A stretch of DNA of 64,000 bases, from positions 243,125 through 307,124 of IMG/VR virus record IMGVR_UViG_3300037110_000087. The stretch is one strand, 5' to 3'. Each line of letters opens with the position of its first letter. Position 1 is the first letter of the stretch. The position numbers and the translations under genes were made by a program. This document shows, one piece after another, positions 23,194-64,000 of the stretch. Below the pieces are notes generated by a model that worked only from the letters and a program-made list of their open reading frames with translations, was not told where the DNA came from and did no database searches.

Positions 23194-23239
23194 ACAGGGA
23201 TCCAGGGAGGATCTTTGCGGAATCGACCATGGAGGTCAA

Positions 23240-24343: not shown

Positions 24344-24486
24344 CTATGGACAACAAACTGAGCTTTGAGGAATGGTGGGAACAGCTTCAGAAAGAGGTCT
24401 ATGCCGACATAGACCCAAAAGAATTGGCTCGTGACGCCTTTGAAGCTGGCTCAAGTTATTGTTACTACAATATCAACAGGTGAAAT

Positions 24487-25199: not shown

Positions 25200-25419
25200 C
25201 ATGGGCTTCCTTATTGGCTTCTTCGTCTATGTGATCATGATGAGTGCGGTTATGTTCCCGATTAGAGACATGATTACGGACCCTGTTTCCAAAGACATGG
25301 GTCCGATCAGGTTCCGAATGTATCCACTTTGGGTCTATGTCATCTTCGCACCTGTAGTGCTATTAGCCATAATTTTTAATCTTTTGTGGATGTTGCTCGT
25401 TGTGGAGTTGTGGAAGTGA
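25168..25419 (+). CDS. small membrane protein (true start likely MGFLIG)
   Basis: Two hydrophobic segments. Confidence 0.55.
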   Translation: MAPEASRSISDMGFLIGFFVYVIMMSAVMFPIRDMITDPVSKDMGPIRFRMYPLWVYVIFAPVVLLAIIFNLLWMLLVVELWK

Positions 25420-25685
25420 TTGAAGGTTGGATTTCCCTAGTACTCGCAACAATTTTCATGTTGCGAGTACTAGTTATGTTCCTATTCTACCGCAGATTTA
25501 CAATCCACCTTGCAAGCGGAGAATCAATTAAGATTGTTTGTACTTACTTTGCCCTTTCTTATAATGAGAGCGGGACAGTAACCGGTTGGCAGATGTCAAG
25601 AAAAGATAATGGGAAGACGTTGATTTATGCAAATCCTGCTCTCATTATCGCTGTCACTGACGAACTTCCTTATATTTGGGACTAA
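25386..25685 (+). CDS. membrane-anchored hypothetical protein
   Basis: One TM segment then a beta-rich domain. Confidence 0.55.
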   Translation: MDVARCGVVEVIEGWISLVLATIFMLRVLVMFLFYRRFTIHLASGESIKIVCTYFALSYNESGTVTGWQMSRKDNGKTLIYANPALIIAVTDELPYIWD

Positions 25686-25750
25686 GAGGGTTATAATAAA
25701 AGTAGACTCAGGGAGAGTCTACAACTAAATCGATCCAGGGAGGATCACAA

Positions 25751-27127
25751 ATGTCAAATCTTTCTAATTCAATTATCGATGTCGACTCATACAAGTTAAG
25801 CCATTTCAACATGTATCCGGATGAGACTCAAAAGGTCTACAGCTATTTCGAATGTAGAAATGGTGCGACCTATTCGAACCAGAAATTCTTCGGCCTTCAG
25901 TATCTCCTCAGGACCCAGTTGGTGAACCCGGTTACTCAGGAAGATCTAGAGGAAGCCTACGAGATCAGCAAGGAGCAGGGTTTGCCTCTCAACTATGCTG
26001 GTTGGCAGTACATCCTTGATGTCCATGATGGGATGTTGCCTCTTCATATCAAGGCTATCCCCGAGGGAATGGTCCTGCCAGTGTCCAATGCATTAATTAC
26101 CATCGAGAACACGGATACTAACCTACCCTGGCTCACCAATTATGTGGAGACTATGTTGTCCCGTATTTGGTACCCTATCACTATCGCGACCATGAGTCAT
26201 GAGGCGAAGAAGGTTATCAGTTACTTCAACGAGCAGACTGCTGACAATCCCGGTCTGGTCCCATTCCAACTGCATGACTTCGGTTCTCGTGGAGTAACCT
26301 GCCCTGAACAGGCTGCAATTGGAGGAATGGCTCACCTCACAAACTTTTATGGCACTGACACAGTTATTGCTCACCTGATGGTTAAAAAGATATATGGGTC
26401 TAAAAACCCTATTAGTTTTTCCGTGAACGCGACTGAACATAGTATCCAGACTTCCAAGGGCCGAGGAGGTGAGAAACAAATATTTGTGGATCTCCTTCAT
26501 AAATATCCAACAGGAATCCTCAGCGTGGTCATTGATTCTTATGACTATCAGAATTTTATTTCCGGTTATGGACTCGAATTTAAGGAAGAAATCCTTGCCC
26601 GAAATGGCAAGCTGGTCTTCCGCCCCGATTCTGGTGACCCAGTTGCCGTGAGTCTCGATGTGATCTCTCGTCTGGATCGGGTCTTCGGCTCTACCATCAA
26701 CACCAAGGGCTACAAAGTTCTTCATCCCCAGGTTGGAATGCTTTGGGGTGATGGCATCGACATCGAGGACATGGAAGTCATTCTGCAGAATCTCAAGAAT
26801 AATGGTTGGTCTTCGGACAATATTGTCTTCGGGATGGGTGGTGGACTGCTTCAGAAGGTCAACCGTGATACCATGCGGTGTGCTTTCAAGTGCAGTGCAC
26901 AGTTGCAGAACGGTAAATGGGTCGATATTTCCAAGGACCCGCTTGACTCGACCAAGAAGTCAAAGAAGGGTCGGCTCAAGGTAATCGAGACTCCCGATGG
27001 GATCATCACTGTCAATCAGAATGACGAGCGATACACCGACAGTGAAGATCTGTTGCAGACGGTGTTCCTCAATGGCGAGATCACGAAGACCTACACTCTG
27101 GATGATATTAGGGAAAGGAACTGGTGA
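25751..27127 (+). CDS. nadV: nicotinamide phosphoribosyltransferase (NAMPT)
   Basis: DVDSYKLSH, LHDFGSRG, ATEHS, SVVIDSYD, VFRPDSGDP, WGDGI, FGMGGGLLQKVNRDT, KKSKKGRL. Confidence 0.95.
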   Translation: MSNLSNSIIDVDSYKLSHFNMYPDETQKVYSYFECRNGATYSNQKFFGLQYLLRTQLVNPVTQEDLEEAYEISKEQGLPLNYAGWQYILDVHDGMLPLHIKAIPEGMVLPVSNALITIENTDTNLPWLTNYVETMLSRIWYPITIATMSHEAKKVISYFNEQTADNPGLVPFQLHDFGSRGVTCPEQAAIGGMAHLTNFYGTDTVIAHLMVKKIYGSKNPISFSVNATEHSIQTSKGRGGEKQIFVDLLHKYPTGILSVVIDSYDYQNFISGYGLEFKEEILARNGKLVFRPDSGDPVAVSLDVISRLDRVFGSTINTKGYKVLHPQVGMLWGDGIDIEDMEVILQNLKNNGWSSDNIVFGMGGGLLQKVNRDTMRCAFKCSAQLQNGKWVDISKDPLDSTKKSKKGRLKVIETPDGIITVNQNDERYTDSEDLLQTVFLNGEITKTYTLDDIRERNW

Positions 27128-51595: not shown

Positions 51596-53194
51596 ATGTC
51601 CATCAATAACCGTAGAACTACTCCCCTAGTTCCCTCTGCCATCGCTGTGGCCCAGGCTACCGCCCACAAGAATCATATGGCTGGCAATAGCTGGGAAATT
51701 ACCCCTATCACCCGTCTGAAGTGCATGGCGAGTTCCTGCTTCTTCGGAGAGCCGACCTATTACAACCCCAAAGTGGCTAGCTATGGCCACTTCTACGAGG
51801 GCAGCTTTCTGGGCCAGACCATGTTTGGCAAGGAATGGCATGGTTTAAATCCTGCGCAGAAGTTGGAGAAGGCGATCGATGAGGCCCTCGATTATGATGC
51901 TGAGGCGACTCTCGATTACGCTTTCGAACTGCGTACTCAGTTGAACATCCGTGCCACCCCTCAGGTGATCGCGGTCCGTGCGGCTAATATGGTTTCCCTC
52001 AAGGGTCAGGGAATCCGCCAGTATGCACTGGCTACCATTCAGCGTCCAGATGATGCTGCCACTCAGTTCGCCTACCATGTCGCCAAGTATGGCAAGAACG
52101 CTCCCATTCCCAACGCTCTCAAGAAGGCGTGGCGTGAGTATCTGATCAAGTGCACCGAATATGACTTGGCCAAATACCAGCTGGCCAGCAAGGAAGTCAA
52201 GATGGTCGACCTAATCAATATGGTCCGGCCCAAGAGCGAAGCTATCGACAAGTTCATGAAGGGCACCCTGTCCAACACCGGCAAGACCTGGGAAGCCATC
52301 ATCAGTGGTGGTGGCAGGTGGGATGAAGCGGTTGAAGTGATGGGTCACATGGCTCTGCTGCGCAATTTGCGCAACTTCGTCGAGAAGAGTGATGAAACCA
52401 CTCAGCGTAAGGTTGCTGACAAGCTGGTTGCTACTGCAGCCAAGGGTCATCAGCTGCCTTTCCGCTACTGGTCTGCCTTTAACGCCCTAGTCGAAGGTGG
52501 ACGGAGAGCACCCGGTTTCATGCTGGATGCAGTCGAGAATGCCCTGCGTGTCTCTCTGGGCAATCTACCCCGATTGCAGGGTAACAGCCTAGTGCTGTCG
52601 GACAATTCCGGTAGCGCTCGTCATGCCTTCCAGAGCAAAATGGGTTCAGTCCAGATCTCCACCATCGGTAACCTGCTGGCTGCGATCGTCGGCAAGATCT
52701 CCGATAATGCCAGAATTGGGGTATTCGGTGACCGGCTGTCCTGTGTCGAATCCCGTAAGTCCAGTTCGGTGTTCGATGACCTGAAGACTCTGAATAACCT
52801 AGGCGAAGGAGTCGGCCAGGGAACTGAGAATGGCATCTGGCTGGCGCTCCATCAGGCTATCGCGGAACGCGAACATTGGGATAATATCTTCGTCTGCAGC
52901 GATATGCAAGCCGGTCATGGTGGGCTTTATGGTTGTGGCGTCATCCCCAGCGAATACCTGTGGCGTACCAACAACCAGGGCTATGGTGCGGCCAGCAGCC
53001 CGGTCACCATTGATGTTCCTTACATGCTGCACAAGTACCGGAAGATCAATCCCAATGTCAACGTGTTCCTGATCCAGACCGCTGGATACGAGGACACCAT
53101 CATCCCTGAATACTTCGATCGCACCTACGTGATCGGGGGATGGAGTGATGGGGTGATCCACTTCGCTGATCAGATGATCAAGCTGCGTCAATGA
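51596..53194 (+). CDS. Ro60/Rsr TROVE-vWA RNA-binding protein
   Basis: N.MAGNSW, FFGEPTYY, R..LNIR..P, IQRPDD, MALLRNLRN, QLPFRY..A, VLSDNSGS MIDAS, SDMQ. Confidence 0.9.
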   Translation: MSINNRRTTPLVPSAIAVAQATAHKNHMAGNSWEITPITRLKCMASSCFFGEPTYYNPKVASYGHFYEGSFLGQTMFGKEWHGLNPAQKLEKAIDEALDYDAEATLDYAFELRTQLNIRATPQVIAVRAANMVSLKGQGIRQYALATIQRPDDAATQFAYHVAKYGKNAPIPNALKKAWREYLIKCTEYDLAKYQLASKEVKMVDLINMVRPKSEAIDKFMKGTLSNTGKTWEAIISGGGRWDEAVEVMGHMALLRNLRNFVEKSDETTQRKVADKLVATAAKGHQLPFRYWSAFNALVEGGRRAPGFMLDAVENALRVSLGNLPRLQGNSLVLSDNSGSARHAFQSKMGSVQISTIGNLLAAIVGKISDNARIGVFGDRLSCVESRKSSSVFDDLKTLNNLGEGVGQGTENGIWLALHQAIAEREHWDNIFVCSDMQAGHGGLYGCGVIPSEYLWRTNNQGYGAASSPVTIDVPYMLHKYRKINPNVNVFLIQTAGYEDTIIPEYFDRTYVIGGWSDGVIHFADQMIKLRQ

Positions 53195-53472
53195 CCGAGA
53201 ACACCTGGGCATCCGTCAGGACTGTAGGGGAGATGATCGATTGGTTATCTACGCTTGATCGGTCAACTCCCTTCATTAGACAGACCCCTGGCCATTACTG
53301 TAACACTCGCAAGGCTGTTGCCCATGTTTACTTCAGCACTCAGGTCCAACTGACTGATGTTGGTAGGGTAGAGGGTGAACAATATGCTGGGGTCATCCCA
53401 AGTGGAGAACCAATCCCAGCAGTCCATATGTTCTTCGATACAGATTTCCGGGAGGAACATGTTAGACCTTGA
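53191..53472 (+). CDS. hypothetical protein
   Basis: ATGA overlap with the Ro60 stop. Confidence 0.6.
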   Translation: MTENTWASVRTVGEMIDWLSTLDRSTPFIRQTPGHYCNTRKAVAHVYFSTQVQLTDVGRVEGEQYAGVIPSGEPIPAVHMFFDTDFREEHVRP

Positions 53473-53623
53473 GGGGAATCCGATTAAACCTCCTCCTAAG
53501 TGCATTCACTGCAAGAAGACTGAAGGGGAGCACAACGCCAAGACTAGGGAATGCCCTGTCGGTCTAAAGACCCGGATTGGATATATCAGGTTCGGGCCAA
53601 CAGTTTTCGAAATTAAGAGTTAG
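53375..53623 (+). CDS. small zinc-binding protein (true start likely MLDLEG)
   Basis: CIHC...H...C. Confidence 0.5.
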   Translation: MNNMLGSSQVENQSQQSICSSIQISGRNMLDLEGNPIKPPPKCIHCKKTEGEHNAKTRECPVGLKTRIGYIRFGPTVFEIKS

Positions 53624-53653
53624 AAAAGAGGGGAGCTTCGGTTCCCCTCTTTT
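53624..53653. terminator. bidirectional intrinsic terminator
   Basis: AAAAGAGGGGAGC-TTCG-GTTCCCCTCTTTT. Confidence 0.88.
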
Positions 53654-53864
53654 CGTATAGTATAATAGAATTATCACTTGGGGATGTAATGAAGCTCAAG
53701 TTCAAAGCAGCGACAAAAATTAATATCACTAAGATCCCGACATTAAAGTTTTTAGACTTTTGGGCCGAAGGAGAGACTAAGGCCCTTGGTTACATCAATA
53801 TGCCAGTTGTAGAAAGGGATCTAGCCAGAACCATTCAGAGGGATAACTATCGTCTATTTCGAAG

Positions 53865-54209
53865 ATGACAATAGCTCTCTTGCGTGGACGGTTACGTGAG
53901 ATTGCTTCCTATTCCAAGGGTGTGTGGAAATGTCTGATCACTGAAACAACTGCTTTAGGTAATGGTATACCACCTAGAGGACAAATATTTTGTTTTAAAG
54001 AGGGAGATCACCATCCTGTCCCTGCAGGTTGGTGGATGGACTGGCCTGAGTCTCATTGGGAAATCTCTAAGGCTGAATACAATAGACTACCTGAGAAGGA
54101 ACGTGCTCTATTAGAGTGCAAGGAACAAATTCCGAAAGAGTATGATAGGCTCCGTGAGGAATTTTATCAACCTGAGGAACATGAACGGAAATGGTGGAGC
54201 AAGAAATGA
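53865..54209 (+). CDS. hypothetical protein
   Basis: ORF in run. Confidence 0.55.
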   Translation: MTIALLRGRLREIASYSKGVWKCLITETTALGNGIPPRGQIFCFKEGDHHPVPAGWWMDWPESHWEISKAEYNRLPEKERALLECKEQIPKEYDRLREEFYQPEEHERKWWSKK

Positions 54210-54589
54210 GTGCACTCTCTCCGATTCTCCGATTAGCCCAGGATAATACCCTGATATTCTGGTGTCCTGGCTGCAACAGATCCCATGGTATTAAATTTGG
54301 TAGTGGTCAATGGACCTGGAATGGTGATCCTATCAAACCAACTTTCTCCCCTAGCGTCCTGGTCACGAGTGGTCACTATTCAGATGGAAATAAAACAGAA
54401 TGCTGGTGCAATTTTGAAGCCAGATTTGGAGAGAAGTCTAGCTTTAAATGTTATAGATGTCATTCCTTTGTTGTGGATGGAATGATTCAGTTTCTGGGTG
54501 ATTGTACCCACGAACTAGTAGGTCAGACAGTACCTTTATTTCCTAAATGGTACAATGAAGAAGAGGGATATCACGACAACGTGCGTTAA
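54191..54589 (+). CDS. DUF6527-like protein
   Basis: FWCPGC..SH, W.WNGD...PTFSPSVL, CHSFV.DG.IQFLGDC.H. Confidence 0.75.
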   Translation: MVEQEMSALSPILRLAQDNTLIFWCPGCNRSHGIKFGSGQWTWNGDPIKPTFSPSVLVTSGHYSDGNKTECWCNFEARFGEKSSFKCYRCHSFVVDGMIQFLGDCTHELVGQTVPLFPKWYNEEEGYHDNVR

Positions 54590-54960
54590 CTGTTTCCCCA
54601 CACGCTGCAAGACAATCTGTAAAGGTTAATGGTAAAATAAAGATTCATTAAGGGCAAATTTTCATGATCAACTCTCTACCCAAACAATATTGCATGCCAA
54701 ATTCCATTGAATTTGGTCGTGGAATGCTTGTGTAAAGGGTCTTTCTGAATCTTTTTATGGAAAAGGCCCCTCGTCAAACAGGGGCCTCAACATTTCCGAC
54801 CCTGGTTCCTTAGATTAGTCCGCACAAATCGCAGAGCTACGAACTCTGAGAACGCCAGTTGAAATCTGGCAGGAACCACCACTGGAGCAAGTTGGATCAA
54901 ACAACTAGAAGTTAGAATAGATCCAAGGCAACAATCAAGGTTGAAGCCAAACAGAAGGGA

Positions 54961-54989
54961 TTGACAGAAACGAACAGTCAGGTTAAAAT
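54961..54989 (+). promoter_or_regulatory. sigma70-type promoter heading the ncRNA field
   Basis: TTGACA-17-TAAAAT. Confidence 0.8.
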
Positions 54990-55174
54990 AAAAGACAACC
55001 AACGTGATCATGGTCATATTGGGAATCCTTGGAAAATCAATAGCGTAATAAGTTTGTCGGGCGTTTTAGGACGCCTGAATGGTCCCACATCCTACGCGGA
55101 AGTGGGCAAGTCCATCGAGGCTGTATCCTCCTGTCGTGAGATAACGGGGCTAGTGGATTCAACAGCAAATATCA

Positions 55175-55279
55175 CCAACAGTAGTGATCGGAACGGTTAC
55201 TTCCCTACCAAACAAGAGAAAAACGGGTTCGCCCGTTGTCGTGGGTAAAACCACTCTCCGTTCCCCCTTTCTCTGTTGG
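55175..55279 (+). ncRNA. Y-RNA-like (Yrl-type) RNA, reduced core, copy 1
   Basis: CCAACAG/CTGTTGG outer stem, bulged nt, GGAACGG/CCGTTCC inner stem, GGTTACTTC motif, pyrimidine-rich 3' strand. Confidence 0.65.
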
Positions 55280-55291
55280 AAGCAATTCAGC

Positions 55292-55390
55292 GGCAGTAGT
55301 GATTGAAATGGTTACTTCGGATAAGCATCAGGTGTTGAGCCTGACTGGCGCGGTCGTCGAAGACCGCTACCCATTTCGCCTTTCTCTGTT
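55292..55390 (+). ncRNA. Y-RNA-like RNA, reduced core, copy 2
   Basis: GGCAG/CTGTT, GAAATGG/CCATTTC, GGTTACTTC. Confidence 0.65.
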
Positions 55391-55511
55391 AGCAACATCG
55401 AGGCTTGGCAATCGCTGAGCCTTAACTCCCTAGGGTAGTCAGGATTCAGTTCCTATCATCTTGTGTTGGAAGGGAGCTAGCAACGTAGAGTACACATAGC
55501 GTTGCAACAAT

Positions 55512-55589
55512 CGGCCTTTAGCGCAGTCTGGTTAGCGCGTCTCGTTTGGGACGAGAAGGTCCGGAGTTCGAATCTCCGAAGGCCGACCA
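55512..55589 (+). tRNA. tRNA-Pro(TGG)
   Basis: Full cloverleaf: CGGCCTT/AAGGCCG, TCTCG-TTTGGGA-CGAGA, GTTCGAATC, encoded CCA. Confidence 0.93.
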
Positions 55590-55639
55590 AGTTCGAATGG
55601 ATCTAGCTCCGACCATGTTATACTAAGGTAGGAGTTAGC

Positions 55640-56419
55640 ATGAAATATGAAGAATTGGGAAACAAAGACCAATACCTAGGGATGGTGACCCTAAGGTGTA
55701 CGACCTGCGAAAAGGAATTCGAACGTCAGGCAAAATACGTTCGATCTTCGATAAAGCTCCATCCGCAAGACAACATAGACTGTGGATGCAAGAATATCAG
55801 GAAGTGTTCCTTCTGTCAAAAATCATCACCTGAGGTAAGATTCACAAAGACTCACAGAGTCTGCGTTGATTGTAGGAAGACTTACAATCATGAATACTAT
55901 CAGGAGAACAAAGAAAAAGTGAATTCGGATAAAGTCTTGAGACAGACAAAGACTTACCGGGAGAACTTTGATCGGGTCAGCCAGTACAAAGAATCTCATT
56001 CCTGTGTTGACTGTGGTAGATTTTTCCCGGCTTGTGCGATGGATTGGGATCATCAAAGAGATAAACTACATAATATTTCTGAGATGGTCAAATTTGCGGC
56101 TTGGGATCTGATTGAAGCTGAGATTGCTAAGTGTGAGCTGATCTGTGCGGTTTGTCACAGGATCAGGACCGCGAAAGAAGGCTCTTACCATAGGGTTAGG
56201 GAGCAAAAACCGAAGGCGCGATCCACCAAGGGCTTCCGTCCTCCTAAAGACGAGTTGGTGAAGCTCGTGCAAACATTCTCAATTTCTGCGATCGGTCGCC
56301 AGTTTGGTGTGAGCGACACGATGGTTAGAAAGTGGTGCAAGATCTTTGACATCGACTACAAATTACTCAGCAAGTTCTCGTTGCAGAACATCTGCCCTGA
56401 GGTTTATGGTCCAGAATAA
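55640..56419 (+). mobile_element. HNH homing endonuclease in ncRNA field
   Basis: CVDCG...MDWDH...EIAKCELICAVCHRIRT. Confidence 0.85.
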
Positions 56420-56634
56420 GGACTCACTTTTACGCCCGGCAGTCGAACAAAGGTGAACAACCTCGACATGGGAAAAGCCGAATCTACGTAGCCCTTTGAG
56501 TCCTTCCAATGCGTTGATGGCCTAAATGCCATCGTTCAACGAAACGGTGCTGTGACACTAGCGCCTACATTCACCCTTCTTGAAGGGGGCAGCGGATAAT
56601 AGAATCCGAGTCGGATTGTGTAACCGACACCAAT

Positions 56635-56746
56635 GGGGGAGTAGCTCAGCATTGCATAGAGCGCTGCAGATCAGTCCAGATATCCATGGTTCCGTCTGGA
56701 GGAAATCCGCAGAGGGCGGCGGTATCAAATCCTCTCTCCCCTACCA
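56635..56746 (+). ncRNA. tRNA-like RNA with 41-nt expanded anticodon loop
   Basis: GGGGGAG/CTCCCCT-A-CCA, GCTC/GAGC D-arm, CTGC/GCAG stem, internal TCCAGA/TCTGGA hairpin, degenerate T-arm. Confidence 0.7.
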
Positions 56747-57358
56747 ATAGGTCCAAGTCGAACCTGATGATCGCACATCGAATCGTCTTCCCGTAGTCGG
56801 CACACCCAAGTAATGCGAGAAGTGGTGAAAAGTCGAAACAAAATTCCAGTGGGTCAAGTGGAACGAATTGGTGAAATGCCATAGTATAAATAGCGTGACG
56901 GTCGACCGTCACGCTCCTATCTTGGTTGTGCACAACAACCCATAGTTCTGAGTCCGATCTCGATCTAATGTGGATAAAGGATCTTGCTAGTCCTCCACCA
57001 TCGGGAGAATGCGAGGCCGCTGCAGCCGTTTTGCGCTCAGATAAACAACTTCCAGTGAGACAGGCCCAATGGGTTGAATAACTGGTTGCATAAATAACGG
57101 GACATGCCATTCCCTTTGTCTAAAATCGACCCTGGTTAAGGTAGGTGAGCCTTCCAGGTTCTTTGACATCGCAGATTCCATGAAGCCTATCAGCGAGGGC
57201 AGTCGACAGAGTAATGGAATCTATAGCATAGGTGACACCAATGCCCACTCCAATTTGTCGGTATCGGTTGGGTTAGTGGATTACGAATCCGGGCCTTCTA
57301 GTCGGGCTTAGTATACTGAGTCCTGGGTTAATGCTAGGTGAATCACCCAGGGCGCATA

Positions 57359-57435
57359 GCGGGGGTAGCTCAGAGAAAGAGCAGCAGGGACAATATCCTT
57401 GAAGGTCGGAGGTTCAAGTCCTTCCCCCCGCACCA
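57359..57435 (+). ncRNA. tRNA-like RNA with non-canonical anticodon loop (ACAATAT)
   Basis: GCGGGGG/CCCCCGC-A-CCA, normal D and T arms; no U33. Confidence 0.75.
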
Positions 57436-57492
57436 TTTAAATCAATACCCCCACAAGCGGAGAAGAAATTCTGTGATGCGAGTGGGACCCCT

Positions 57493-57571
57493 GGCGGGGT
57501 AGCTCAGATGCATTAAGAGTACCGGCTAATTAAGCTGGAAGTCAGGGTCTTGCAAACCCTCCCCGCCACCA
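57493..57571 (+). ncRNA. tRNA-like RNA (loop TAATTAA, T-loop CTTGCAA)
   Basis: GGCGGGG/CCCCGCC-A-CCA; CCGGC/GCTGG; altered T-loop. Confidence 0.7.
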
Positions 57572-57579
57572 GTACAAGT

Positions 57580-57662
57580 CTTTCAGCAGTGATTGGAACG
57601 GTTACTTCAAATGTGATTGAGCCGTGGGGCAACCCACTCTCCGTTTCGCTTTTCTCTGAAAG
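57580..57662 (+). ncRNA. Y-RNA-like RNA, minimal core, copy 3
   Basis: CTTTCAG/CTGAAAG, GGAACGG/CCGTTTC, GGTTACTTC. Confidence 0.65.
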
Positions 57663-57725
57663 GTTATTAGGTCCTTGCCATGGAGGCAAGAAGGAAACTT
57701 GGGCATGCACTCCCAACCTATCATA

Positions 57726-57796
57726 GGGCGGGTACCTCAGATGCGATAAGAGGTCCTCCAAGGAAGTCGGTGTGTTGCAAGCACTCCCGCCCACCA
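57726..57796 (+). ncRNA. tRNA-like RNA with vestigial anticodon arm
   Basis: GGGCGGG/CCCGCCC-A-CCA; CCTC/GAGG D-arm; CCT-CCA-AGG mini arm; T-loop GTTGCAA. Confidence 0.7.
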
Positions 57797-57839
57797 ATCT
57801 CAAAATCCTGACCCTGTAGTCTTGCTCCTATAACGAGCG

Positions 57840-58390
57840 CATAAGGCTGGACTGGGCATTGGCACCGGAAACCGCTATAGCAGCTAGGGCCGGAAACGCA
57901 AATGTCATAGCAGGGTCGCCCATCAAATCTCCATGGTGGTGGAGATCAACGTGGCGATTCACAAGAACGAGGGACGGTGAGGGAACGCAGAACGTAATCC
58001 TGTGCACAAGGGTTCTGACTAATCCCAAGAAACGGAGGCATTCTAGATATGCTTCATGGAATAGTTTCCTTCCAGCCACGTGTAATTCTTAGGATACAGA
58101 ACCCGGTAACGGGCTGAAACGAATCGAAGTGGCTTGTGCAAAGATCTCATCCGTAGGGGTGGGGGAGCCGGGAAAGGGTGAAGCGGAAGGTACAACCGCA
58201 GAAGCAACTCCCACGAGCAGAGAGGGCACTCTCACGGAGCCACTATCCTGAGAAGCAAATCCATCCCTGAGAACGGCAATTCAAGGGGAGAGAAACCCAA
58301 GTCCTGTCCTTGCCGGGATAAAACACACGCCACCCTGAGAAGGTGGAAATTCCTAAATAGGGCTGTAGGAGATGAGCGGTGTGAGGGTAT
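57840..58390 (+). ncRNA. candidate large structured RNA
   Basis: No credible ORF; many hairpins (CCCG-GTAA-CGGG, GAGAG-GGCA-CTCTC, CCACC-CTGAGAA-GGTGG); CTGAGAA three times. Confidence 0.45.
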
Positions 58391-58399
58391 ACAATCAAA

Positions 58400-58570
58400 C
58401 GGCGGATAGCTCAGTTGGAGTTATCAGAGCGCCACATCAAGGAAAAGTAGAAGAAAACTTGGGGCAAAAGCTGAGTGAATTCGCGACGATCTCACTGAGT
58501 AGCCTAGAGCAGAGTATTCTAACCAGTACTAGTGTGGAGGGCGGTGGTTCAAATCCATCTCCGTCGACCA
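58400..58570 (+). ncRNA. tRNA-like RNA with 96-nt anticodon-loop insert
   Basis: CGGCGGA/TCCGTCG-A-CCA; CCACA/TGTGG; GGTGG-TTCAAAT-CCATC. Confidence 0.75.
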
Positions 58571-58746
58571 TTTCGGTAGGTAGTTTAAACAGAACGCGGT
58601 GTGCAGGAAGACGAGGAACGAAGCACCAGTACAGCACGTGTAAACTGGCGAGTTGAACCGGGGGCCACTCAGTCTTTTTAGGACTGGTGACGCAAACAAA
58701 CACATTGAGATTGAGGGTTTGAGCCTCATCTACCGTCCAGTTCATT

Positions 58747-58827
58747 GGTGGAGTACCTCAGGGACAGGCAGAGGGACCTCGTAGCACGAGAGGAAAGTCG
58801 GTGGTTCAATCCCATCCTCCACCACCA
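58747..58827 (+). ncRNA. tRNA-like RNA with aberrant anticodon arm
   Basis: GGTGGAG/CTCCACC-A-CCA; CTCGT-AGC-ACGAG 3-nt loop; T-arm intact. Confidence 0.7.
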
Positions 58828-59006
58828 ATGTCAAGAACGGTAATCAATCCGTCGCCTTGTGATCCGGGTATGTTGGATCACCCCTCCACTCTGGGGAAAG
58901 AATCCGGGTAATGGTGGATCAACCGGAAGGCAAAGCAACAGATGCGGCAAAATTGAAAAGGCCCCGCGAGGAAGTCGACTCTAAATGTGCTGTTGCAAAG
59001 TTCAAG

Positions 59007-59145
59007 TTCGGCAGTGATTGTCACAGTTACTCCATGCTAAGGACGAGGATTTGGGATTCGAATTCCCATCGGGGCCTCCAATACAACCATTGGTCCCGTA
59101 GCTCAGGGGTAGAGCGCGTAAAACACTGTGTCGCCTTTCTCCGAA
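59007..59145 (+). ncRNA. YrlA-like Y RNA with circularly permuted tRNA domain
   Basis: TTCGG/CCGAA stem with bulged C, CACAG/CTGTG, GTTACTCC; then T-arm TGGGA-TTCGAAT-TCCCA, loop-closed acceptor CGGGGCC/GGTCCCG, D-arm GCTC-AGGGGTA-GAGC. Confidence 0.8.
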
Positions 59146-59150
59146 TCAAT

Positions 59151-59223
59151 TGGCCCCTCGTCTAATGGAGGACAAGTCCCACACCGGGAAGAAACGCGGG
59201 TTAGAATCCAGCGGGGCCAACCA
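59151..59223 (+). ncRNA. tRNA-like RNA with 5-nt anticodon loop
   Basis: TGGCCCC/GGGGCCA-A-CCA; TCCC-ACACC-GGGA; T-loop TTAGAAT. Confidence 0.65.
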
Positions 59224-59242
59224 AATCTCATAGGAGCGCATC

Positions 59243-59554
59243 GTGCAAATCGATAATCTACCAACCAAAGTTGATCTCAGGGACAGATTCTTGTTTCCTC
59301 CCATTTATGATCAAGGTGAACTCGGATGTAGTGTATGTTGTTCTTCTGCAGCGATCTTGGACATGACGAAAATTAATCAGATGATCGGCAAGAAAGTCCG
59401 AAAGGATAAGAAGCCATTCAAATCAACATTTAAGGTCAACACCGTCAAAGGTGTGGTGGACCATCCCATTCTGCATGTGCCCTGTTTCACCTTCGAAGAG
59501 GATGATTCCTACGTTGAGTGCAGACGGTGCATCGCAGTCGAAGATTCCCAGTAA
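59243..59554 (+). pseudogene. papain-like (C1) peptidase N-terminal fragment
   Basis: LPTKVDLR...PIYDQGELG; remainder of the domain absent. Confidence 0.5.
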
Positions 59555-60057
59555 AAGGTAGTATTGAGGAACGTACCAATAAGTGGCTATGAAGAGCTAC
59601 AGGTGTTCCAGGTGGGTGTACAGTCCTACCACCTTCTTACCTCTTCACAGGGCTGGGAATACGATCGGCTAAGTAGTACCCGAATGCGAACCTTAGCTGA
59701 AGGGGCTTATACTCCTAAAAATAGTTTTAAGATTTTCTAAAAGGAGAAAAAGAGATAATAAAAGATAAGAGATGTACTTGGTATGCAGCTTGGCATTATT
59801 GTATTTATCTTCCATTAGATGATGACAAACTTTATCAAATAGCAATTCCGTATCATGGATATTTTGAACACTTACAAAGACTTGAAATAACTAACGAACG
59901 TAATGCAGATGATAATGATTTGTCTTTCAATTATTAGAATATAGCTTGGATGACTCTACTCGTAAGAATGAGTCGAAAATGTTGGTAACAGCATATAAGT
60001 TCGTAGCTCCAAGCTATTAAAAAATTCAAATTAAGATTCCGATTAGTAAGAATATGA

Positions 60058-60597
60058 CTATTTACAGAGCTTGTTAGCACAAGCCTGGAATTTTCTTTGG
60101 TCATTGTTCTGAATTCCTTCCAGCTTACTCTCTCCATGAATGGGTTCATAATGGAAGATTCCATTTAATTCGAAGGCTAGCTTCAGTGATGGAATAAAAA
60201 TGTCTAGTTCGGAATTGATGGTATCTTTCCGGTTGAAATGAATCTTAAGATTTGGGTACAATAAAGTAATTTGCTCTTCAAGCCATTTCTCTAGTTTGGA
60301 TCGAGTGGTTCCATGAGTCTTATGAAGGTTATTATATCTAGTCCCGCAAGAAATTGAGCAGAACAATCTACCTGATTTCGATTTCTTGAGATCTTTGGGA
60401 TTTTTGGTGATCAGTTCATTACATTGTGAGCATCTAGTGGCAAATGTAGTTGAATAATGGATATAATAACAATCCACACAACAGAAGACCTTTGATTGAT
60501 TATATCCATGATCTCTCTCAAATGGTCTGTTACATTGACAACAAACTAAGTTTACCATTTTTGTCATTTCAGCTCCTATTACTATGGTATCATGCAA
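60058..60597 (-). mobile_element. PD-(D/E)xK-type homing endonuclease with zinc-finger repeats, C-terminally short
   Basis: CxxC...FCSxxC repeats; ELDIFIP..KLAFELNG.FHY. Confidence 0.7.
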
Positions 60598-60658
60598 TCC
60601 AGGGATTCGATTTTCGGTATTCGAGTCCCTCCATTCCTCGTTATTTTGGGTTCGTATT

Positions 60659-60734
60659 GGATCGGAAGCTATATTGGTTTAGCGCTGGCGTGAAGTCCCA
60701 GAGGATGCAGGTTCGAAGCCTGTCCGATCCACCA
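60659..60734 (+). tRNA. tRNA-Phe(GAA)
   Basis: GGATCGG/CCGATCC-A-CCA; loop GTGAAGT; C31-C39 mismatch. Confidence 0.75.
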
Positions 60735-60769
60735 GTTTTGTTCTCAAAACTATTTAACTTGGAGAGTAT

Positions 60770-61063
60770 ATGAAAGGTGCTATTGTTTCTAATGAACCTG
60801 AATGCACGACAAAGAAGCCATTAATTGCGGCCTTTGAGGATGTTGAATCAACAATTGGGGAAACTGAACGGCTCGTGAGTTTGGTTGAGAGGACCTTTAA
60901 TCTACTGCTTGAAATGGTTCCTGGTGGAGAGGAAGAGGAAGGTCTGGGAAAATCGATCGATCGAAATCCAATCCCAATTGTGCAACGTTTGAATATGCTT
61001 GATGGTCGGTTGAGAACAATCAATAAGGACCTATCAGATATCATCGACCGTAGCCACATCTAA
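60770..61063 (+). CDS. hypothetical coiled-coil protein
   Basis: GGAG RBS. Confidence 0.6.
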   Translation: MKGAIVSNEPECTTKKPLIAAFEDVESTIGETERLVSLVERTFNLLLEMVPGGEEEEGLGKSIDRNPIPIVQRLNMLDGRLRTINKDLSDIIDRSHI

Positions 61064-61150
61064 TCGTTGACCAGAAGGGTGACTGGTTAACCTGTAGGAA
61101 GGGCAGCAAGGCAGCGATCTTGTCCCCTGGTCCGGAGCAATCCGGAGTCG

Positions 61151-61188
61151 AGCCAACCTGGGCACTAGTGATAGCCAACCTGGGCACT
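61151..61188 (+). repeat. 16-bp direct repeat
   Basis: AGCCAACCTGGGCACT at 61151-61166 and 61173-61188. Confidence 0.9.
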
Positions 61189-61300
61189 CGTCATTGAACA
61201 CCAGCGCTAATGGGCAAATGGCCGAAGGACGTTCGCGTCCAACAGGTTGAATTAACAACGAATTGGCGCTCCATTAAAAATCTCATGGAGGGGTAACCCG

Positions 61301-61567
61301 ATGAAGTGTGTACAGAAGATCATCAACAAAGAACCCAAGGAAGTCATCATCAAGCGCGTGTCCAACGAACAGGCCGAAAAACTGGTCAGTGAAGGTTGGG
61401 CCTTCGCCTCCAAGAAGGATTGGAAGGCTGCACCCAATACAACCTGGGTCAAGTCCACTACCACTCCCAATGCCATCAAGGAAGCCAAGCAGCGTAGGAC
61501 GGAGAAGCGTAAAACTCCGACTCCGCCCAGGGAGACTGGTTCGCGCCGGTCCAAGGCAACGAAATAA
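61301..61567 (+). CDS. small basic protein
   Basis: GGAGGG RBS; Lys/Arg-rich tail. Confidence 0.7.
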   Translation: MKCVQKIINKEPKEVIIKRVSNEQAEKLVSEGWAFASKKDWKAAPNTTWVKSTTTPNAIKEAKQRRTEKRKTPTPPRETGSRRSKATK

Positions 61568-61686
61568 AGGTTAGAACAGTTTCAGAACTAGTGGTTGAGA
61601 AGTCACTAGATGTTGAGTCGGGGTAAGCCACAGACATGGCCCGGTAATCTAGCCGGAATACAGTTTCTGCGATCTTCGACAAGTTA

Positions 61687-61774
61687 GTAAGGGCTAATGA
61701 CCCATACAAAGGTAGAGCGGCCTCTATGTTAGGCTTGCCGGGGGTCATGATCCGGTGACTAAAACGACTCTACC
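61687..61774 (+). ncRNA. 88-nt structured repeat, copy A
   Basis: GTAAGGG..ATGACCCAT.CAAAGGTAGAGCGGCC...CGACTCTACC. Confidence 0.6.
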
Positions 61775-61984
61775 TCCAATCGACTCCCTGCGGCGGTTCA
61801 ATTTAACCCGCCCTACTGAGCGATGATATGCATACTCGGCGGCGACCGACTTCCGGATGGCCCAGTGAAGTTTCAGTCCGGAGATTTTGAGAAGTCCACC
61901 CACTTAAGACCGTATCCAAGTCTGTAATTGTTTCTCTTTGGGGATCCGACAGATAAGGCTAGTGGATGAAACGGTTTCCTTTTG

Positions 61985-62072
61985 GTAAGGGTCGATGACC
62001 CATGCAAAGGTAGAGCGGCCACCATGCTTGGCCCTCTGGAGGTTTGCTCCGGAGAAAAACAACGACTCTACC
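61985..62072 (+). ncRNA. 88-nt structured repeat, copy B
   Basis: Same motif with compensatory changes. Confidence 0.6.
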
Positions 62073-62479
62073 ATCCATTTCGTGCCTTTCTACCCCGACC
62101 AAGGATGATTGACACGACTCTATGGGGATGAACAGATTCGACAGGTTTATGCCCTGAGTGTAGCGCAGGTAGAGGAAACCGATGGCCTCTCAAAAATCGG
62201 TAAAAACACAACTGCCGAAGACTTTCTTCTCCAGGCTGCGTAAGCAGCATCCTCTAAGCGATCGTTTGGTAGCTTAGTTGTAAGGAATCTCAAGGATGGT
62301 TCGCCTACCGAGAGAGTTCACAAACTAGATTCCGATGAAATGTTCTAGTCGGAATGACACAAAGGACATAAGTCCTCGATTAGAGTTGTCCGGTTTACTC
62401 TACAGAGGTCACTAGAAACGGACTAAACCTGTGAATGAACTACCTTAGGAATTTTCTTGGACAGGACTAGCATAAGTCC

Positions 62480-63043
62480 TCATCTCCACCTTGTTTGGCT
62501 AGTGCGTCCGTCCCAATCACCAAACAGACCGAGCGCATTAGCCTTCCTCATGCCTTCACAGACCACGAGCCAAGCGTTATAAGGCATAATTCCCCTGGTC
62601 ACATTACATCGGTAACAAGCAGGGACCACGTTGCCCTTCGTGTGACCTTTAGAATTGTCAATTCTATCTAATGTCATATTGGTGATAAGGTTGTCACCAC
62701 AGTAAAAGCAAGGATTAGAAATTTGTGCCAAAATAAATTTGACATCCAGATCCGAGACCCTTTTCTTCTTCTTGTCCGCTGATTTACAATATTTGAGAAT
62801 TAAGGCAGCGCGGACTTCTAAATTGGTTGACCTAGTTTCAATCTTCCTCTGAATTGATCTTCTTTGCGCTGCTTCTGGTGTAGTTTTCATTTTCTTGTAG
62901 GATAATCTTCTCAGATTGTCGCAGGTCTTACAAAGAGAGCGAAAGTATCTGACTCCTTTGATGGTTTGGGCGTAAGGCTTAACTTCGGGATATTTCTTAT
63001 TGCAACCAGAACACTGCCAAGATTCTAAGGTGATTCTTTCCAT
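62480..63043 (-). mobile_element. HNH homing endonuclease
   Basis: CFYCGD...TLDRIDNSKGH...NVVPACYRCN. Confidence 0.85.
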
Positions 63044-63622
63044 TGGTGGACCTCTCCATTAAGTATAACATTTCACTAGTCCACCAACGGTTATAATATC
63101 TTTAGGAGTAGTGATGAACAAAATTAGAGTACAAAATCTTTTGACCAGAATTTCTAGGCTCGTTCAGCAGGAACGATTGGACAAACCATCCTTGAGGCAC
63201 CGTTCCATGCCTAACCCGCAGACCCCTCAAGAGTATGCAAGACGGGAGATTGGCTTAGAGGTAGCCATTCTTTAAAGAGTGACAAGGACGATCCATAAGG
63301 GGGTAATCGGTGCGGGGCGACACCCTTGATCCGTTAGCCGAACTCAGTATAAGTCCAGGGGAAGAATAGCGGACAGTCTTCAACAAGTAGTGGGTATTAC
63401 ACCGGTATCCAGTTAAGTCGAACGGGAAGTGTTCAGAACCAATCGGCAGTTGAAGGACCCTTAGAGTCTTTGGTGTAATAACACACCTTCTTGCAGACCG
63501 CTGGTATGGAGCGGAATAAAAGAGTCCATAACAAAGCAGATTCCGTAGTCGTCATCTGAAAAGACCCTCGACTGGAGCGATCAAAGTCTGCCATGTTGGT
63601 TGATCATCTAGACCAATTTCTT

Positions 63623-63735
63623 TGGCTCATACCTCAGCTGGTAGAGGGCTCGCCTGAATCGTTATCGTAGTTTCGGACTGCGAATAACCTGTAGTAAGCG
63701 AGATGTCGGTGGTTCGACTCCACCTGGGCCAACCA
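63623..63735 (+). tRNA. tRNA (Ile-like body) with 44-nt anticodon loop containing an intron-like hairpin
   Basis: TGGCTCA/TGGGCCA-A-CCA; CTCGC/GCGAG; GGTGG-TTCGACT-CCACC; insert GTTAT-CGTAG..CTGCG-A-ATAAC. Confidence 0.75.
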
Positions 63736-63857
63736 GACCCCGCTACGCCTCTGCTAAGAACCTGCATCCTTCACCGGACCAGACCCACTAGCATGCGCAC
63801 CAAGAGAAGCCGGTAACGGAGATCGCCAGGAAGCAAGGCCTGGAATGGGGGGAATCA

Positions 63858-64000
63858 ATCGCTAGTGACCGACTGGTAAGGTCGTCCCTGATGGGGACGT
63901 AAATGCGCGGGTTCGAGTCCCGCTCTTGAAGGTAACTTCGGGATAGCTCAGGTGGTAGAGCCGTCGTGGACGTTAAAATGTGGGTTCAAATCCTGCCTAG
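63858..64000 (+). ncRNA. double tRNA-like element, truncated by window end
   Basis: D1-AC1-T1, acceptor hairpin TCTTGAA-GGTAAC-TTCGGGA, then D2-AC2-T2. Confidence 0.6.

What the first reader, a model, noticed from the sequence alone, without database searches (positions are those of the whole stretch)
51596..59145. Phage-encoded Ro60 plus a YrlA-like Y RNA: a complete Ro RNP
Seen: a full-length TROVE-vWA gene and, at 59007-59145, an RNA whose ends form a bulged stem enclosing T-arm, loop-closed acceptor stem and D-arm in that permuted order. Known: YrlA Y RNAs have this tRNA-mimic architecture, bind Ro60/Rsr and can tether it to PNPase. Inference: the phage brings its own RNA-surveillance RNP to redirect host RNA decay or repair, or to counter RNA-targeting defence.
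Basis: partly seen in the sequence, partly recalled or inferred. Interest (0 to 1): 0.88.

Follow-up and report, generated by a model that had tools for sequence, protein, structure and literature searches.

The report
Phage Ro60 with four Y RNAs
A 307-kb jumbo phage encodes its own Ro60 RNA-binding ring protein and four small partner RNAs, one of them a permuted tRNA mimic; phage Ro particles are already known, but this one belongs to a large, well-conserved RNA family that the public RNA catalogue does not detect.

Summary
ORF 51596-53194 is a full-length Ro60 (TROVE plus vWA/MIDAS; the predicted fold matches every solved Ro60). The RNA at 59006-59146 has a bulged terminal stem, a second stem, then a T-arm, a loop-closed 7-bp acceptor stem and a D-arm. 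Rfam's YrlA model reaches only 21 bits (cut-off 69). A covariance model built from nine homologues in other phages, without the window, finds it full-length at 69.9 bits (E 1e-13). All five helices covary.

They share the scaffold (helix, one bulged base, AG:CU, internal loop, second helix, GUUACUYC) but carry plain hairpins instead of the tRNA mimic.

A scaffold model finds 115 copies in 56 of 78 Ro-encoding viral loci. 114 are on the Ro strand and 80 lie within 500 nt upstream of Ro. Bacillus phage G has one tRNA-type unit and at least six short ones.

Phage Ro60 plus Y RNA is already published (22 phages in 2014; Thermus phage phiLo in 2025). I therefore call this a divergent variant of a known kind. 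Ro binding and function remain untested.

The parts
51596..53194 (+). Ro60 gene: TROVE/HEAT ring plus vWA domain with a DxSxS MIDAS motif at residues 336-340; 532 aa
55175..55279 (+). Y RNA-like unit A. Scaffold: 7-bp helix, bulged U, AG:CU, 7-bp second helix, GUUACUUC. The insert is three small hairpins with no tRNA features.
   Evidence: R1 34.6 bits, E 5e-7, not in the seed. The MFE fold gives the same scaffold, z -3.4. H2 own-partner rank 0.000.
55290..55393 (+). Y RNA-like unit B, 10 nt after unit A. Same scaffold; the insert is two hairpins.
   Evidence: R1 19.9 bits, E 0.005; MFE scaffold; H2 rank 0.000
57580..57662 (+). Y RNA-like unit C, the shortest (83 nt), lying between two aberrant tRNA-like genes
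   Evidence: R1 55.3 bits (seed member); R2 30.4 bits; MFE z -2.4
59006..59146 (+).
   Evidence: R2 leave-one-out 69.9 bits, E 1.3e-13; R1 18.6 bits; Rfam YrlA 21.2 bits, local only; covariation
59007..59014 (+). Unit D, 5' strand of the presumed Ro-binding site: UUCGG, bulged C59012, AG. It pairs with 59139-59145 (CU, CCGAA).
59020..59033 (+). Unit D, 5' strand of the second helix (59020-26, pairing with 59126-32), followed by the family-invariant GUUACUCC (59026-33)
59052..59068 (+). Unit D T-arm: UGGGA / UUCGAAU / UCCCA. The T54-Psi55-C56-R57-A58 positions are canonical; the 53:61 pair is A-U, not G-C.
59070..59098 (+). Unit D closed acceptor-like stem, 7 bp (CGGGGCC / GGUCCCG). Its 3'-type strand is followed directly by U-CCA (59077-80).
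   Evidence: this helix is 98.5% paired; all 7 pairs show double changes
59099..59115 (+). Unit D: U8-A9 equivalents and the D-arm (GCUC / AGGGGUA / GAGC)

Best explanation
The phage makes its own Ro ribonucleoprotein from a Ro60 ring protein and a panel of four Y RNAs encoded 2.0-5.8 kb downstream on the same strand, inside its tRNA/tmRNA island.

Each RNA closes its ends into the same two-helix scaffold: a 5-7 bp helix, one bulged base on the 5' strand, an invariant A-U and G-C pair, an internal loop, a 7-bp second helix, then GUUACUYC. By analogy with solved Ro-Y RNA complexes, this scaffold is the docking site on the outer face of Ro60.

The variable insert is the effector module. Units A-C carry simple hairpins. 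Unit D carries a tRNA body (T-arm, closed acceptor stem, D-arm) in which the scaffold takes the place of the anticodon arm.

The RNAs most likely gate access to the Ro60 cavity and tether it to other RNA-handling proteins. Candidates are host PNPase, or tRNA-recognising and repair enzymes such as the phage's own Rnl1-type ligase. This would bias decay or repair of structured or damaged RNA during infection.

Shown here: the protein fold, the RNA structures, their covariation, and their tight genomic linkage to Ro60. Inferred: Ro binding, the partners, and the biological role.
For: Ro60 identity.

Scaffold family.
- Model R1, built from 20 short units of other loci plus unit C, finds exactly four hits in 128 kb of window strands. 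All are on the + strand between 55.2 and 59.1 kb.
- In 78 other Ro loci (1.45 Mb) R1 finds 115 hits at E<=0.1. 114 are on the Ro strand, 56 loci have at least one, and 80 hits lie within 500 nt upstream of Ro.
- In 41 MAG/genome loci, 21 of 22 hits are on the Ro strand just upstream of Ro.
- Reverse test: an RNA-only pattern finds 38 viral stretches. Thirteen hold Ro in the stretch, all on the same strand. Eleven more come from contigs already found to encode Ro (contig names).

Structure.
- RNAalifold predicts the bulged helix independently.
- Helix 1: 94.4% paired against 66.6% in shuffles; 86.7 against 61.8% in 100 distinct copies.
- Helix 2: each unit's own 3' partner gives -7.7 kcal/mol against -3.9 for other units' partners, p 2e-18.

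YrlA-type units.
- Ten aligned units give 5 helices and 22 compensatory pairs.
- The leave-one-out model R2 scores unit D at 69.9 bits.
- R2 finds 24 full-length members in other loci, all on the Ro strand.
- Cutting units in the acceptor loop and rejoining the ends makes ARAGORN call an intron-containing tRNA: phage G at default settings, unit D at the relaxed setting. The uncut sequences are not called.

Other support.
- The most conserved positions sit at the helix-bulge junction and in GUUACUUC.
- The triplet after AG tracks the Ro clade: UGA in 26 of 28 units near close Ro relatives, CGG in 67 of 72 near distant ones.
- No protein neighbour of Ro is conserved across loci, so the RNA is Ro's only constant companion.
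- Precedent: PMC4201824, PMC12135203 and bioRxiv 10.1101/312249.
Against: - Nothing here shows transcription or Ro binding.
- Rfam YrlA does not reach its gathering score in the window or in any of 12 related loci.
- The published 5'-strand motif GNCGAAN0-1G is not literally present in the window units, which read CAGUAG, CAGCAG and CGGCAG.
- Unit D lies 5.8 kb from Ro, outside the 4-kb criterion of Chen et al. 2014.
- Unit D's score with the short-unit model is marginal: 18.6 bits, falling to 10.9 bits in a truncated alignment with filters off.
- No sigma-70-type promoter or intrinsic terminator is evident next to the window units, so they would have to be processed out of a tRNA-cluster transcript.
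- The covariation shuffles do not correct for relatedness of the sequences.
Confidence: 0.78

Rival explanations
1. Unit D is a false positive: a chance junction of two neighbouring (pseudo)tRNA genes in a tRNA cluster. The T-arm of the first and the D-arm of the second would imitate YrlA.
For: Chen et al. 2014 name dimeric tRNAs as the known false positive. A real tandem-tRNA junction in L003 scores 26.3 bits with Rfam YrlA, more than unit D's 21.2. The island is full of tRNA-like genes. GGCCCCG at 58960 could pair with the acceptor-type strand at 59070, and 59091-97 could pair with 59213-19.
Against: No tRNA model hit covers 58960-59080 or a tRNA starting at 59092. There is no D or anticodon arm upstream and no anticodon or T-arm downstream. 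The element is framed by the family scaffold. It matches a model built only from other phages over its full length at 69.9 bits. The acceptor-like helix covaries in all 7 pairs.
Confidence: 0.03
2. The scaffold units are cis-acting leader elements of the Ro60 mRNA, for example an autoregulatory Ro-binding site, rather than free-standing Y RNAs.
For: In other loci 80 of 115 units lie within 500 nt upstream of the Ro ORF on the same strand. Bacterial Y RNAs are co-transcribed with rsr.
Against: In the window the four units lie downstream of Ro, separated from it by several ORFs and tRNA genes. L002 unit 1 has its own -35/-10 boxes and a stem-plus-U-run terminator. The phage G YrlA-type unit is also followed by a terminator. 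Units occur in arrays of up to 5 or 6.
Confidence: 0.1
3. Unit D is a permuted or split tRNA gene whose product, after cleavage in the acceptor loop, acts in translation rather than as a Ro partner.
For: The acceptor stem is 7 bp and its 3'-type strand is followed by U-CCA. The same N-CCA is present in phage G, L115 and L044. ARAGORN calls the rotated sequence a tRNA. M. smegmatis YrlA is cut by RNase P and receives CCA.
Against: There is no anticodon loop; the position is filled by the ~50-nt conserved scaffold shared with the tRNA-less units A-C. The 53:61 pair is non-canonical. About half of the homologues lack CCA. Linkage is to Ro, not to translation genes.
Confidence: 0.06
4. The RNAs are real, but their protein partner is not Ro60. 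They would simply be a class of phage small RNAs that travels in the same mobile tRNA/Ro island.
For: Binding is not tested. In the reverse search at least 14 of 38 RNA-bearing stretches showed no Ro on the DNA held.
Against: Strand and distance coupling to Ro is extreme. No other protein neighbour is conserved. The RNA motif next to the bulge changes with the Ro clade. The scaffold geometry matches known Ro sites. The stretches without Ro are short pieces of incomplete contigs.
Confidence: 0.05

Closest known systems
YrlA (Rfam RF02553; S. Typhimurium and M. smegmatis; Chen et al. 2014, PMC4201824; structure 6CU1, bioRxiv 10.1101/312249)
   Same: Same order of parts: terminal Ro-binding stem, second ('anticodon-like') stem, T-arm, loop-closed acceptor stem, D-arm. 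Same strand as Ro60. The canonical T- and D-loop nucleotides are present. A related unit (L024) aligns to the whole Rfam model. A 7-bp acceptor stem as in M. smegmatis YrlA.
   Different: Rfam score 21 bits against the 69-bit cut-off, local only. The 5' strand reads UUCGG-C-AG, not GNCGAA(N)G. The lower helix carries a single-base bulge. GUUACUCC replaces the model's CUAc. It lies 5.8 kb from Ro. The acceptor loop starts with an encoded U-CCA.
Bacillus phage G gp540 (Ro) and its Y RNA-like genes (closest cultured relative)
   Same: Ro 35.6% identical. Ro also sits inside a tRNA plus tmRNA island. It has one YrlA-type unit with the same scaffold and an encoded A-CCA, and at least six short units.
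   Different: In phage G five of the short units form an array in the unannotated 1-kb gap directly upstream of Ro. In the window they are scattered downstream among tRNAs. The triplet after AG is CGG in phage G and UGA in the window.
Thermus phage phiLo Ro60 with Yrl1/Yrl2 and host PNPase (PMC12135203; PDB 9KOP, 9L5Y)
   Same: The closest solved structure (profile E 2e-24, TM 0.63/0.71). A phage Ro60 with several phage-encoded Y-like RNAs. It is the working model for hijacking host PNPase.
   Different: The phiLo Yrls are described as stem-bulge-stem RNAs with a CGAA motif lying upstream of Ro, and the term 'tRNA-like' does not occur in that paper's text. Protein identity is only about 20%.
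Metazoan Y RNAs and nematode sbRNAs
   Same: The lower stem is a helix plus a single bulged base on the 5' strand, followed by an internal loop or bulge on the opposite strand. Then comes an upper stem, then a conserved pyrimidine-rich motif: UUAUC in animals, GUUACUUC here. The loop or insert is variable and modular.
   Different: No Rfam Y_RNA hit at E<=10 over 53.1-64 kb. The sequences of the Ro site differ (GGUCCGA against NNNRG-N-AG). No poly-U/La site. The motif resemblance is an observation, not tested homology.
YrlB / Yrn2 (second, shorter bacterial Y RNAs)
   Same: Units A-C resemble them in being extra, shorter Ro-site-bearing RNAs encoded beside the tRNA-like one.
   Different: YrlB keeps a T-arm. 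Units A-C have none, although 14 related units elsewhere do.

Membership tests
Ro60 / TROVE protein family | TROVE (HEAT-repeat ring) domain | tested here: met
   Pfam PF05731 34.8 bits against a cut-off of 23. The Foldseek top 13 are all Ro60 chains.
Ro60 / TROVE protein family | C-terminal vWA domain with a MIDAS DxSxS motif | tested here: met
   D336-N-S338-G-S340 is invariant in 29 relatives. It aligns to the corresponding motif of phiLo Ro60. vWA-domain structures follow the Ro60 chains in the Foldseek list.
Ro60 / TROVE protein family | Binds Y RNA on the outer surface and single-stranded RNA in the cavity | not testable with these tools
   Needs EMSA, RIP or a structure.
YrlA (Rfam RF02553) | Score at or above the curated gathering threshold (69 bits) | tested here: not met
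   21.2 bits, model positions 23-87 only. No hit at gathering level.
YrlA (Chen et al. 2014 criteria) | T-arm, loop-closed acceptor stem and D-arm in that order, enclosed by a stem formed from the RNA ends | tested here: met
   the rotated sequence is called a tRNA.
YrlA (Chen et al. 2014 criteria) | GNCGAAN0-1G motif in the 5' strand | tested here: not met
   Unit D reads GUUCGGCAGUG. Family-wide the core is G(93%)-N(A 74%)-A(85%)-G(100%), so many relatives read CGAAG but the window units do not.
YrlA (Chen et al. 2014 criteria) | Within 4 kb of Ro60 and on the same strand | tested here: inconclusive
   Same strand: yes. Unit D is 5.8 kb downstream; units A and B are 2.0-2.2 kb downstream.
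YrlA (Chen et al. 2014 criteria) | Bound by Rsr/Ro60; tRNA-type modifications; RNase P or CCA processing | not testable with these tools
   Only the prerequisites are visible: a 7-bp acceptor stem, an encoded U-CCA, and canonical T- and D-loop bases.
Phage Ro-linked scaffold family defined here (models R1, R2) | Helix, 1-nt 5' bulge, AG:CU, YGR, second helix, GUUACUYC ... CUC-helix | tested here: met
   All four window units are hit by R1. Unit D scores 69.9 bits with the leave-one-out model R2.
Metazoan Y RNA (Rfam RF00019) | Match to the Y_RNA covariance model | tested here: not met
   No Y_RNA hit at E<=10 in 53100-64000.
Permuted tRNA gene | Complete tRNA including anticodon stem-loop after rejoining the ends | tested here: not met
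   The anticodon arm position is occupied by the conserved scaffold. ARAGORN needs a 44-nt 'intron' and a lowered threshold.

The most novel reading that the evidence does not exclude
The four RNAs are a panel of interchangeable Ro60 adaptors drawn from a large, uncatalogued phage family. Its fixed scaffold parallels the animal Y RNA layout: a bulged lower stem, an upper stem, and GUUACUUC in the position of UUAUC. Its effector slot accepts anything from a hairpin to a T-arm, a permuted tRNA, or a whole tRNA in normal order (L003, L027, L066).

Unit D, with its 7-bp acceptor stem and encoded U-CCA, would be cut by host RNase P into a nicked, CCA-ended tRNA mimic held on Ro60. That would couple the ring to tRNA repair, CCA-adding or charging enzymes, or decoy host anticodon nucleases, so as to protect the phage's translation supply.
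Probability: 0.15. Interest if true: 0.8.

Novelty: new variant of a known kind. Interest (0 to 1): 0.5.

Why it matters
Ro60 and Y RNAs are conserved from bacteria to humans, and Ro60 is a lupus autoantigen. What Y RNAs do, and how bacterial and animal Y RNAs are related, is still unclear.

This locus belongs to a family of well over a hundred phage copies with strong covariation. That gives a clean definition of the presumed Ro-binding site. It also provides a natural series of swapped effector modules on one scaffold, and a culturable model (Bacillus phage G) whose units are unannotated in the phage G record.

The family makes three questions directly testable:
- which scaffold bases Ro60 reads;
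- what the tRNA-like module recruits;
- whether phages use Ro particles to repair RNA or to subvert host RNA decay and RNA-targeting defence.

The concept itself, a phage-encoded Ro RNP, is not new.

Tried and rejected
- Rfam at gathering thresholds gave no YrlA in the window or in 12 related loci.
- Rfam at permissive E-values gave only local T/AS/D hits, no stronger than tandem-tRNA junctions. The Rfam score was dropped as a discriminator.
- Megablast of 51.6-59.3 kb against 50,697 phage records found no match.
- The single-sequence fold z-score of unit D was uninformative at -0.64.
- MAFFT alignments put the 3' strand of helix 2 out of register, so RNAalifold missed it in the short units. 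It was replaced by an alignment-free own-versus-other duplex test.
- R1 with filters off truncated unit D to 10.9 bits. This was resolved with the dedicated model R2.
- A search for a conserved protein partner next to Ro found none.
- Desulfovibrio phage 7757 has a Ro relative (35.6% identical) but no unit was detected.
- The giant-virus MAG Ro loci gave no R1 hits.
- A search for a terminal repeat, to extend the cut element at 63.9 kb, found only the contig end itself.
- The supplementary tables of Chen et al. 2014 and the 2020 Annual Review are not held. I could not check exactly which phage G RNA was reported.
- A K-turn reading of the bulged helix was considered and rejected, because there are no tandem G-A pairs.

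Full report
WHAT THE WINDOW IS. The window is the last 64 kb of a 307-kb viral contig, IMGVR_UViG_3300037110_000087. No phage in GenBank is close at the DNA level. The finding lies in a tRNA/tmRNA island on the + strand.

THE PROTEIN. ORF 51596-53194 is 532 aa.
- It carries a Pfam TROVE domain above the curated cut-off and matches phrog_850 'RNA-binding protein'.
- By sequence, its nearest solved relative is the Ro60 of Thermus phage phiLo: E 9e-12 alone, 2e-24 with a three-sequence profile.
- The MIDAS motif DNSGS at residues 336-340 is invariant in 29 relatives.
- An AlphaFold model built on those 29 sequences has pLDDT 78.7 and pTM 0.78. Its 13 best PDB matches are all Ro60 chains from phage phiLo, human, Xenopus and Deinococcus, with TM 0.55-0.71.
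This is a full-length Ro60.

The sequence 59007-59145 contains, in this order:
- a terminal helix with a bulged C, followed by an AG:CU pair step;
- a second helix;
- a T-arm with loop UUCGAAU;
- a 7-bp hairpin in the position of an acceptor stem;
- a D-arm with loop AGGGGUA.

The bases that make tRNA tertiary contacts are present: U8, A14, G18-G19, A21, and T54-Psi55-C56-A58. The 53:61 pair is A-U rather than G-C (read).

On its own this is weak evidence. The folding energy is ordinary (z -0.64). Rfam's YrlA model aligns only its T/AS/D core at 21.2 bits against a gathering score of 69. A genuine junction of two tRNA genes in a related locus scores 26.3 bits. The authors who defined YrlA name exactly that as the false positive to beware of.

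WHAT RESOLVED IT. A relative of the Ro gene in another jumbo-phage contig (L003) has, just upstream, two elements sharing short motifs with both ends of the window RNA. Searching that motif in the window gave four exact copies. All are on the + strand and all lie between 55.2 and 59.1 kb.

All four share one scaffold:
- a 5-7 bp helix;
- one bulged base;
- AG paired to CU;
- UGAU and a few more unpaired bases;
- a 7-bp second helix;
- GUUACUYC, then a variable insert;
- the return strand of the second helix;
- a U-rich stretch, then CU and the return strand of the first helix.
Single-sequence folding recovers this scaffold for A, B and C.

LINKAGE TO Ro60. With an alignment of three Ro proteins I fetched 79 viral loci encoding relatives. 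I built model R1 from 20 short units.
- In the window R1 finds only the four units.
- In the other 78 loci it finds 115 hits at E<=0.1. Of these, 114 are on the Ro strand, 56 loci have at least one, and 80 hits lie within 500 nt upstream of the Ro start.
- In 41 loci from MAGs and genomes, 21 of 22 hits are on the Ro strand just upstream of Ro. Rfam sees no YrlA at its gathering score in the 12 loci tested.
- Reverse test: an RNA-only pattern finds 38 viral stretches. Thirteen hold Ro in the DNA held, always on the same strand. Eleven more come from contigs already known to carry Ro (contig names).
- No protein-coding neighbour of the window's Ro is conserved in the other loci.

STRUCTURE SUPPORT.
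- RNAalifold predicts the bulged first helix unaided.
- In 20 sequences 94.4% of its cells pair, against 66.6% in shuffles and at most 59% when partners are slid.
- In 100 distinct copies the figures are 86.7% against 61.8%. That alignment was fitted to the model, which favours the structure.
- The second helix shifts register between copies, so I tested it without an alignment. Each unit's 5' strand binds its own 3' region at -7.7 kcal/mol on average, against -3.9 for other units' regions. The median rank is 0.03 and p is 2e-18. The four window units rank at or below 0.016.
- The most conserved positions are G before the bulge (93%), A (85%) and G (100%) after it, the following YGR, GUUACUUC (84-100% per base), and CUC on the return strand.
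- The YGR triplet is UGA near Ro proteins at least 43% identical to the window's (26 of 28). It is CGG near more distant ones (67 of 72). This fits co-evolution with Ro, although shared ancestry alone could produce it.

UNIT D IS A YrlA-TYPE MEMBER. A strict descriptor classifies 86 units: 59 plain, 14 with a T-arm only, 9 with T-arm then D-arm, and 3 with a tRNA in normal order. Of the 86, 85 are on the Ro strand.
- Ten T-then-D units, including D and one from Bacillus phage G, align well.
- RNAalifold returns both scaffold helices plus the T, acceptor-like and D stems: 30 pairs, 22 of them with compensatory changes.
- 93.3% of cells pair, against 64.7% in shuffles, and 0 of 500 shuffles reach any measure. 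The acceptor-like helix pairs at 98.5% with double changes at all seven pairs.
- Model R2, built from the nine units that are not from the window, finds 59006-59146 full-length at 69.9 bits, E 1.3e-13. It finds 24 full-length members elsewhere, all on the Ro strand.
- Cutting the phage G and window units in the acceptor loop and rejoining the ends makes ARAGORN call an intron-bearing tRNA. The uncut sequences are not called.
The module is therefore a permuted tRNA body with the scaffold in place of the anticodon arm, which is the definition of YrlA.

RELATION TO PUBLISHED YrlA. A related unit (L024) aligns to the entire Rfam model, which shows the correspondence:
- the Rfam first helix maps to the phage first helix;
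- the 7-bp 'anticodon-like' helix maps to the phage second helix;
- Rfam's CUAc maps to the phage UUAC.
The published GNCGAA(N)G motif overlaps the phage G-N-AG junction. Where the bulged base is A (74% of copies) many relatives read CGAAG. The window units read CAGUAG, CAGCAG and CGGCAG, so they do not meet the motif literally. The family is thus a divergent branch that the curated model does not capture.

Its lower stem has a helix, a single 5' bulge, two pairs and then an opening with a U-rich opposite strand. A conserved motif follows the upper stem. This also recalls the vertebrate Ro site (a helix, a single bulged C, a three-base bulge opposite) and the UUAUC motif of animal Y RNAs and sbRNAs. 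That resemblance is an observation. Rfam's Y_RNA model does not hit.

CLOSEST CULTURED RELATIVE. This is Bacillus phage G, with Ro gp540 35.6% identical. Its Ro also sits among tRNAs and a tmRNA.
- R1 finds five units in the unannotated 1-kb gap upstream of gp540 and one more by a tRNA.
- A YrlA-type unit lies 2.1 kb upstream (Rfam 36.2 bits, sub-threshold; R2 113.8 bits as a seed member) and is followed by a terminator.
- In phage G, the window, L115 and L044, the 3'-type strand of the 7-bp acceptor stem is followed directly by N-CCA.
M. smegmatis YrlA, which also has a 7-bp stem, is cut by RNase P and receives CCA. Processing of unit D into a nicked, CCA-ended mimic is therefore plausible but untested.

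HOW IT MOST LIKELY WORKS. Ro60 binds the scaffold on its outer surface. The RNA both gates the cavity and tethers the ring to another factor through its insert. That is the established model for Deinococcus Yrn1 with PNPase and the working model for phage phiLo.

The window phage also encodes a T4 Rnl1-type RNA ligase and an NAD-salvage set. It carries many tRNAs and a tmRNA. This fits a programme that keeps the translation apparatus running against host attack. All of this paragraph is inference.

RIVALS. Four alternatives are weighed in their own section, and each is disfavoured by the results above:
- a tandem-tRNA artefact;
- a cis-acting leader of the Ro mRNA;
- a true permuted tRNA;
- a non-Ro protein partner.

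NOVELTY AND SCORE. Phage Ro60 with nearby Y RNAs is published: 22 phages (PMC4201824), jumbo phages noted in PMC7824862, and the phiLo complex (PMC12135203). What is new:
- a divergent scaffold consensus that Rfam misses;
- four paralogues in one phage;
- a swappable insert, including whole tRNAs in normal order in some relatives;
- the recurrent encoded CCA.
I rate it a new variant of a known kind, with interest 0.5.

Noticed in passing
window 56635-56746, 57493-57571, 57726-57795, 59151-59223: Cloverleaf-like genes with a 7-bp acceptor stem and an encoded N-CCA, but with odd loops: T-loops CUUGCAA and GUUGCAA, and anticodon loops of 3-5 nt. ARAGORN calls none of them. Rfam tRNA only reaches 29.1 bits for 59151-59220. 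They flank Y RNA units C and D.
   Followed up: partly
window 58400-58570 and 63623-63732: Two tRNA genes interrupted by inserts. The first has a ~100-nt insert between the D-arm and T-arm and is not called by any tool. The second has a 40-nt insert in the anticodon loop (Rfam tRNA 50.8 bits).
   Followed up: no
window 63859-64000: A tRNA body without an acceptor stem, then a T-arm, a 7-bp closed stem and a second D-arm (Rfam YrlA 28.1 bits; R2 local 38.1 bits). It has no Ro-type scaffold. The contig ends at 64000 and has no terminal repeat, so it cannot be resolved.
   Followed up: partly
window 62124-62491: A phage-encoded tmRNA (Rfam 86.2 bits) that ARAGORN did not report. Bacillus phage G also has a tmRNA in its Ro/tRNA island.
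   Followed up: no
L003:9016-9143, L003:9553-9683, L027:15408-15534, L066:17694-17819: Units with the same Ro-type scaffold whose insert is a tRNA body in normal order (D, anticodon, T) rather than permuted. ARAGORN calls the second L003 unit tRNA-Tyr; the descriptor scored that unit 'T-arm only'. A further L003 unit (9154-9299) has no tRNA features.
   Followed up: partly
L121 (Bacillus phage G NC_023719) 5197-5808, 11302-11366 and 3720-3875: The 1-kb gap upstream of gp540, which has no annotated feature, holds an array of five scaffold units. One more lies next to tRNA-Gly. A YrlA-type unit with its own terminator lies 2.1 kb upstream.
   Followed up: yes
window 58960-58966 vs 59070-59076; 59091-59097 vs 59213-59219: Near-identical acceptor-type strands (GGCCCC/GGGGCC) recur in unit D and in its neighbours. 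This allows alternative long-range pairings and probably reflects local duplication of a tRNA-like gene.
   Followed up: partly
window 20388-27127: A cluster of NAD kinase, a T4 Rnl1-type RNA ligase (21421-22599), an NMNAT-NUDIX fusion and nicotinamide phosphoribosyltransferase. This is an RNA-repair plus NAD-regeneration set typical of jumbo phages.
   Followed up: no
window 58911-59165 (+): An 84-aa ORF overlaps all of unit D. It has no family match and is most likely spurious.
   Followed up: partly
L063, L065, L069, L070, L074, L076, L077 (giant-virus MAG contigs): Ro60 relatives (30-32% identical) on contigs labelled as giant-virus MAGs. None has a detectable scaffold unit.
   Followed up: no
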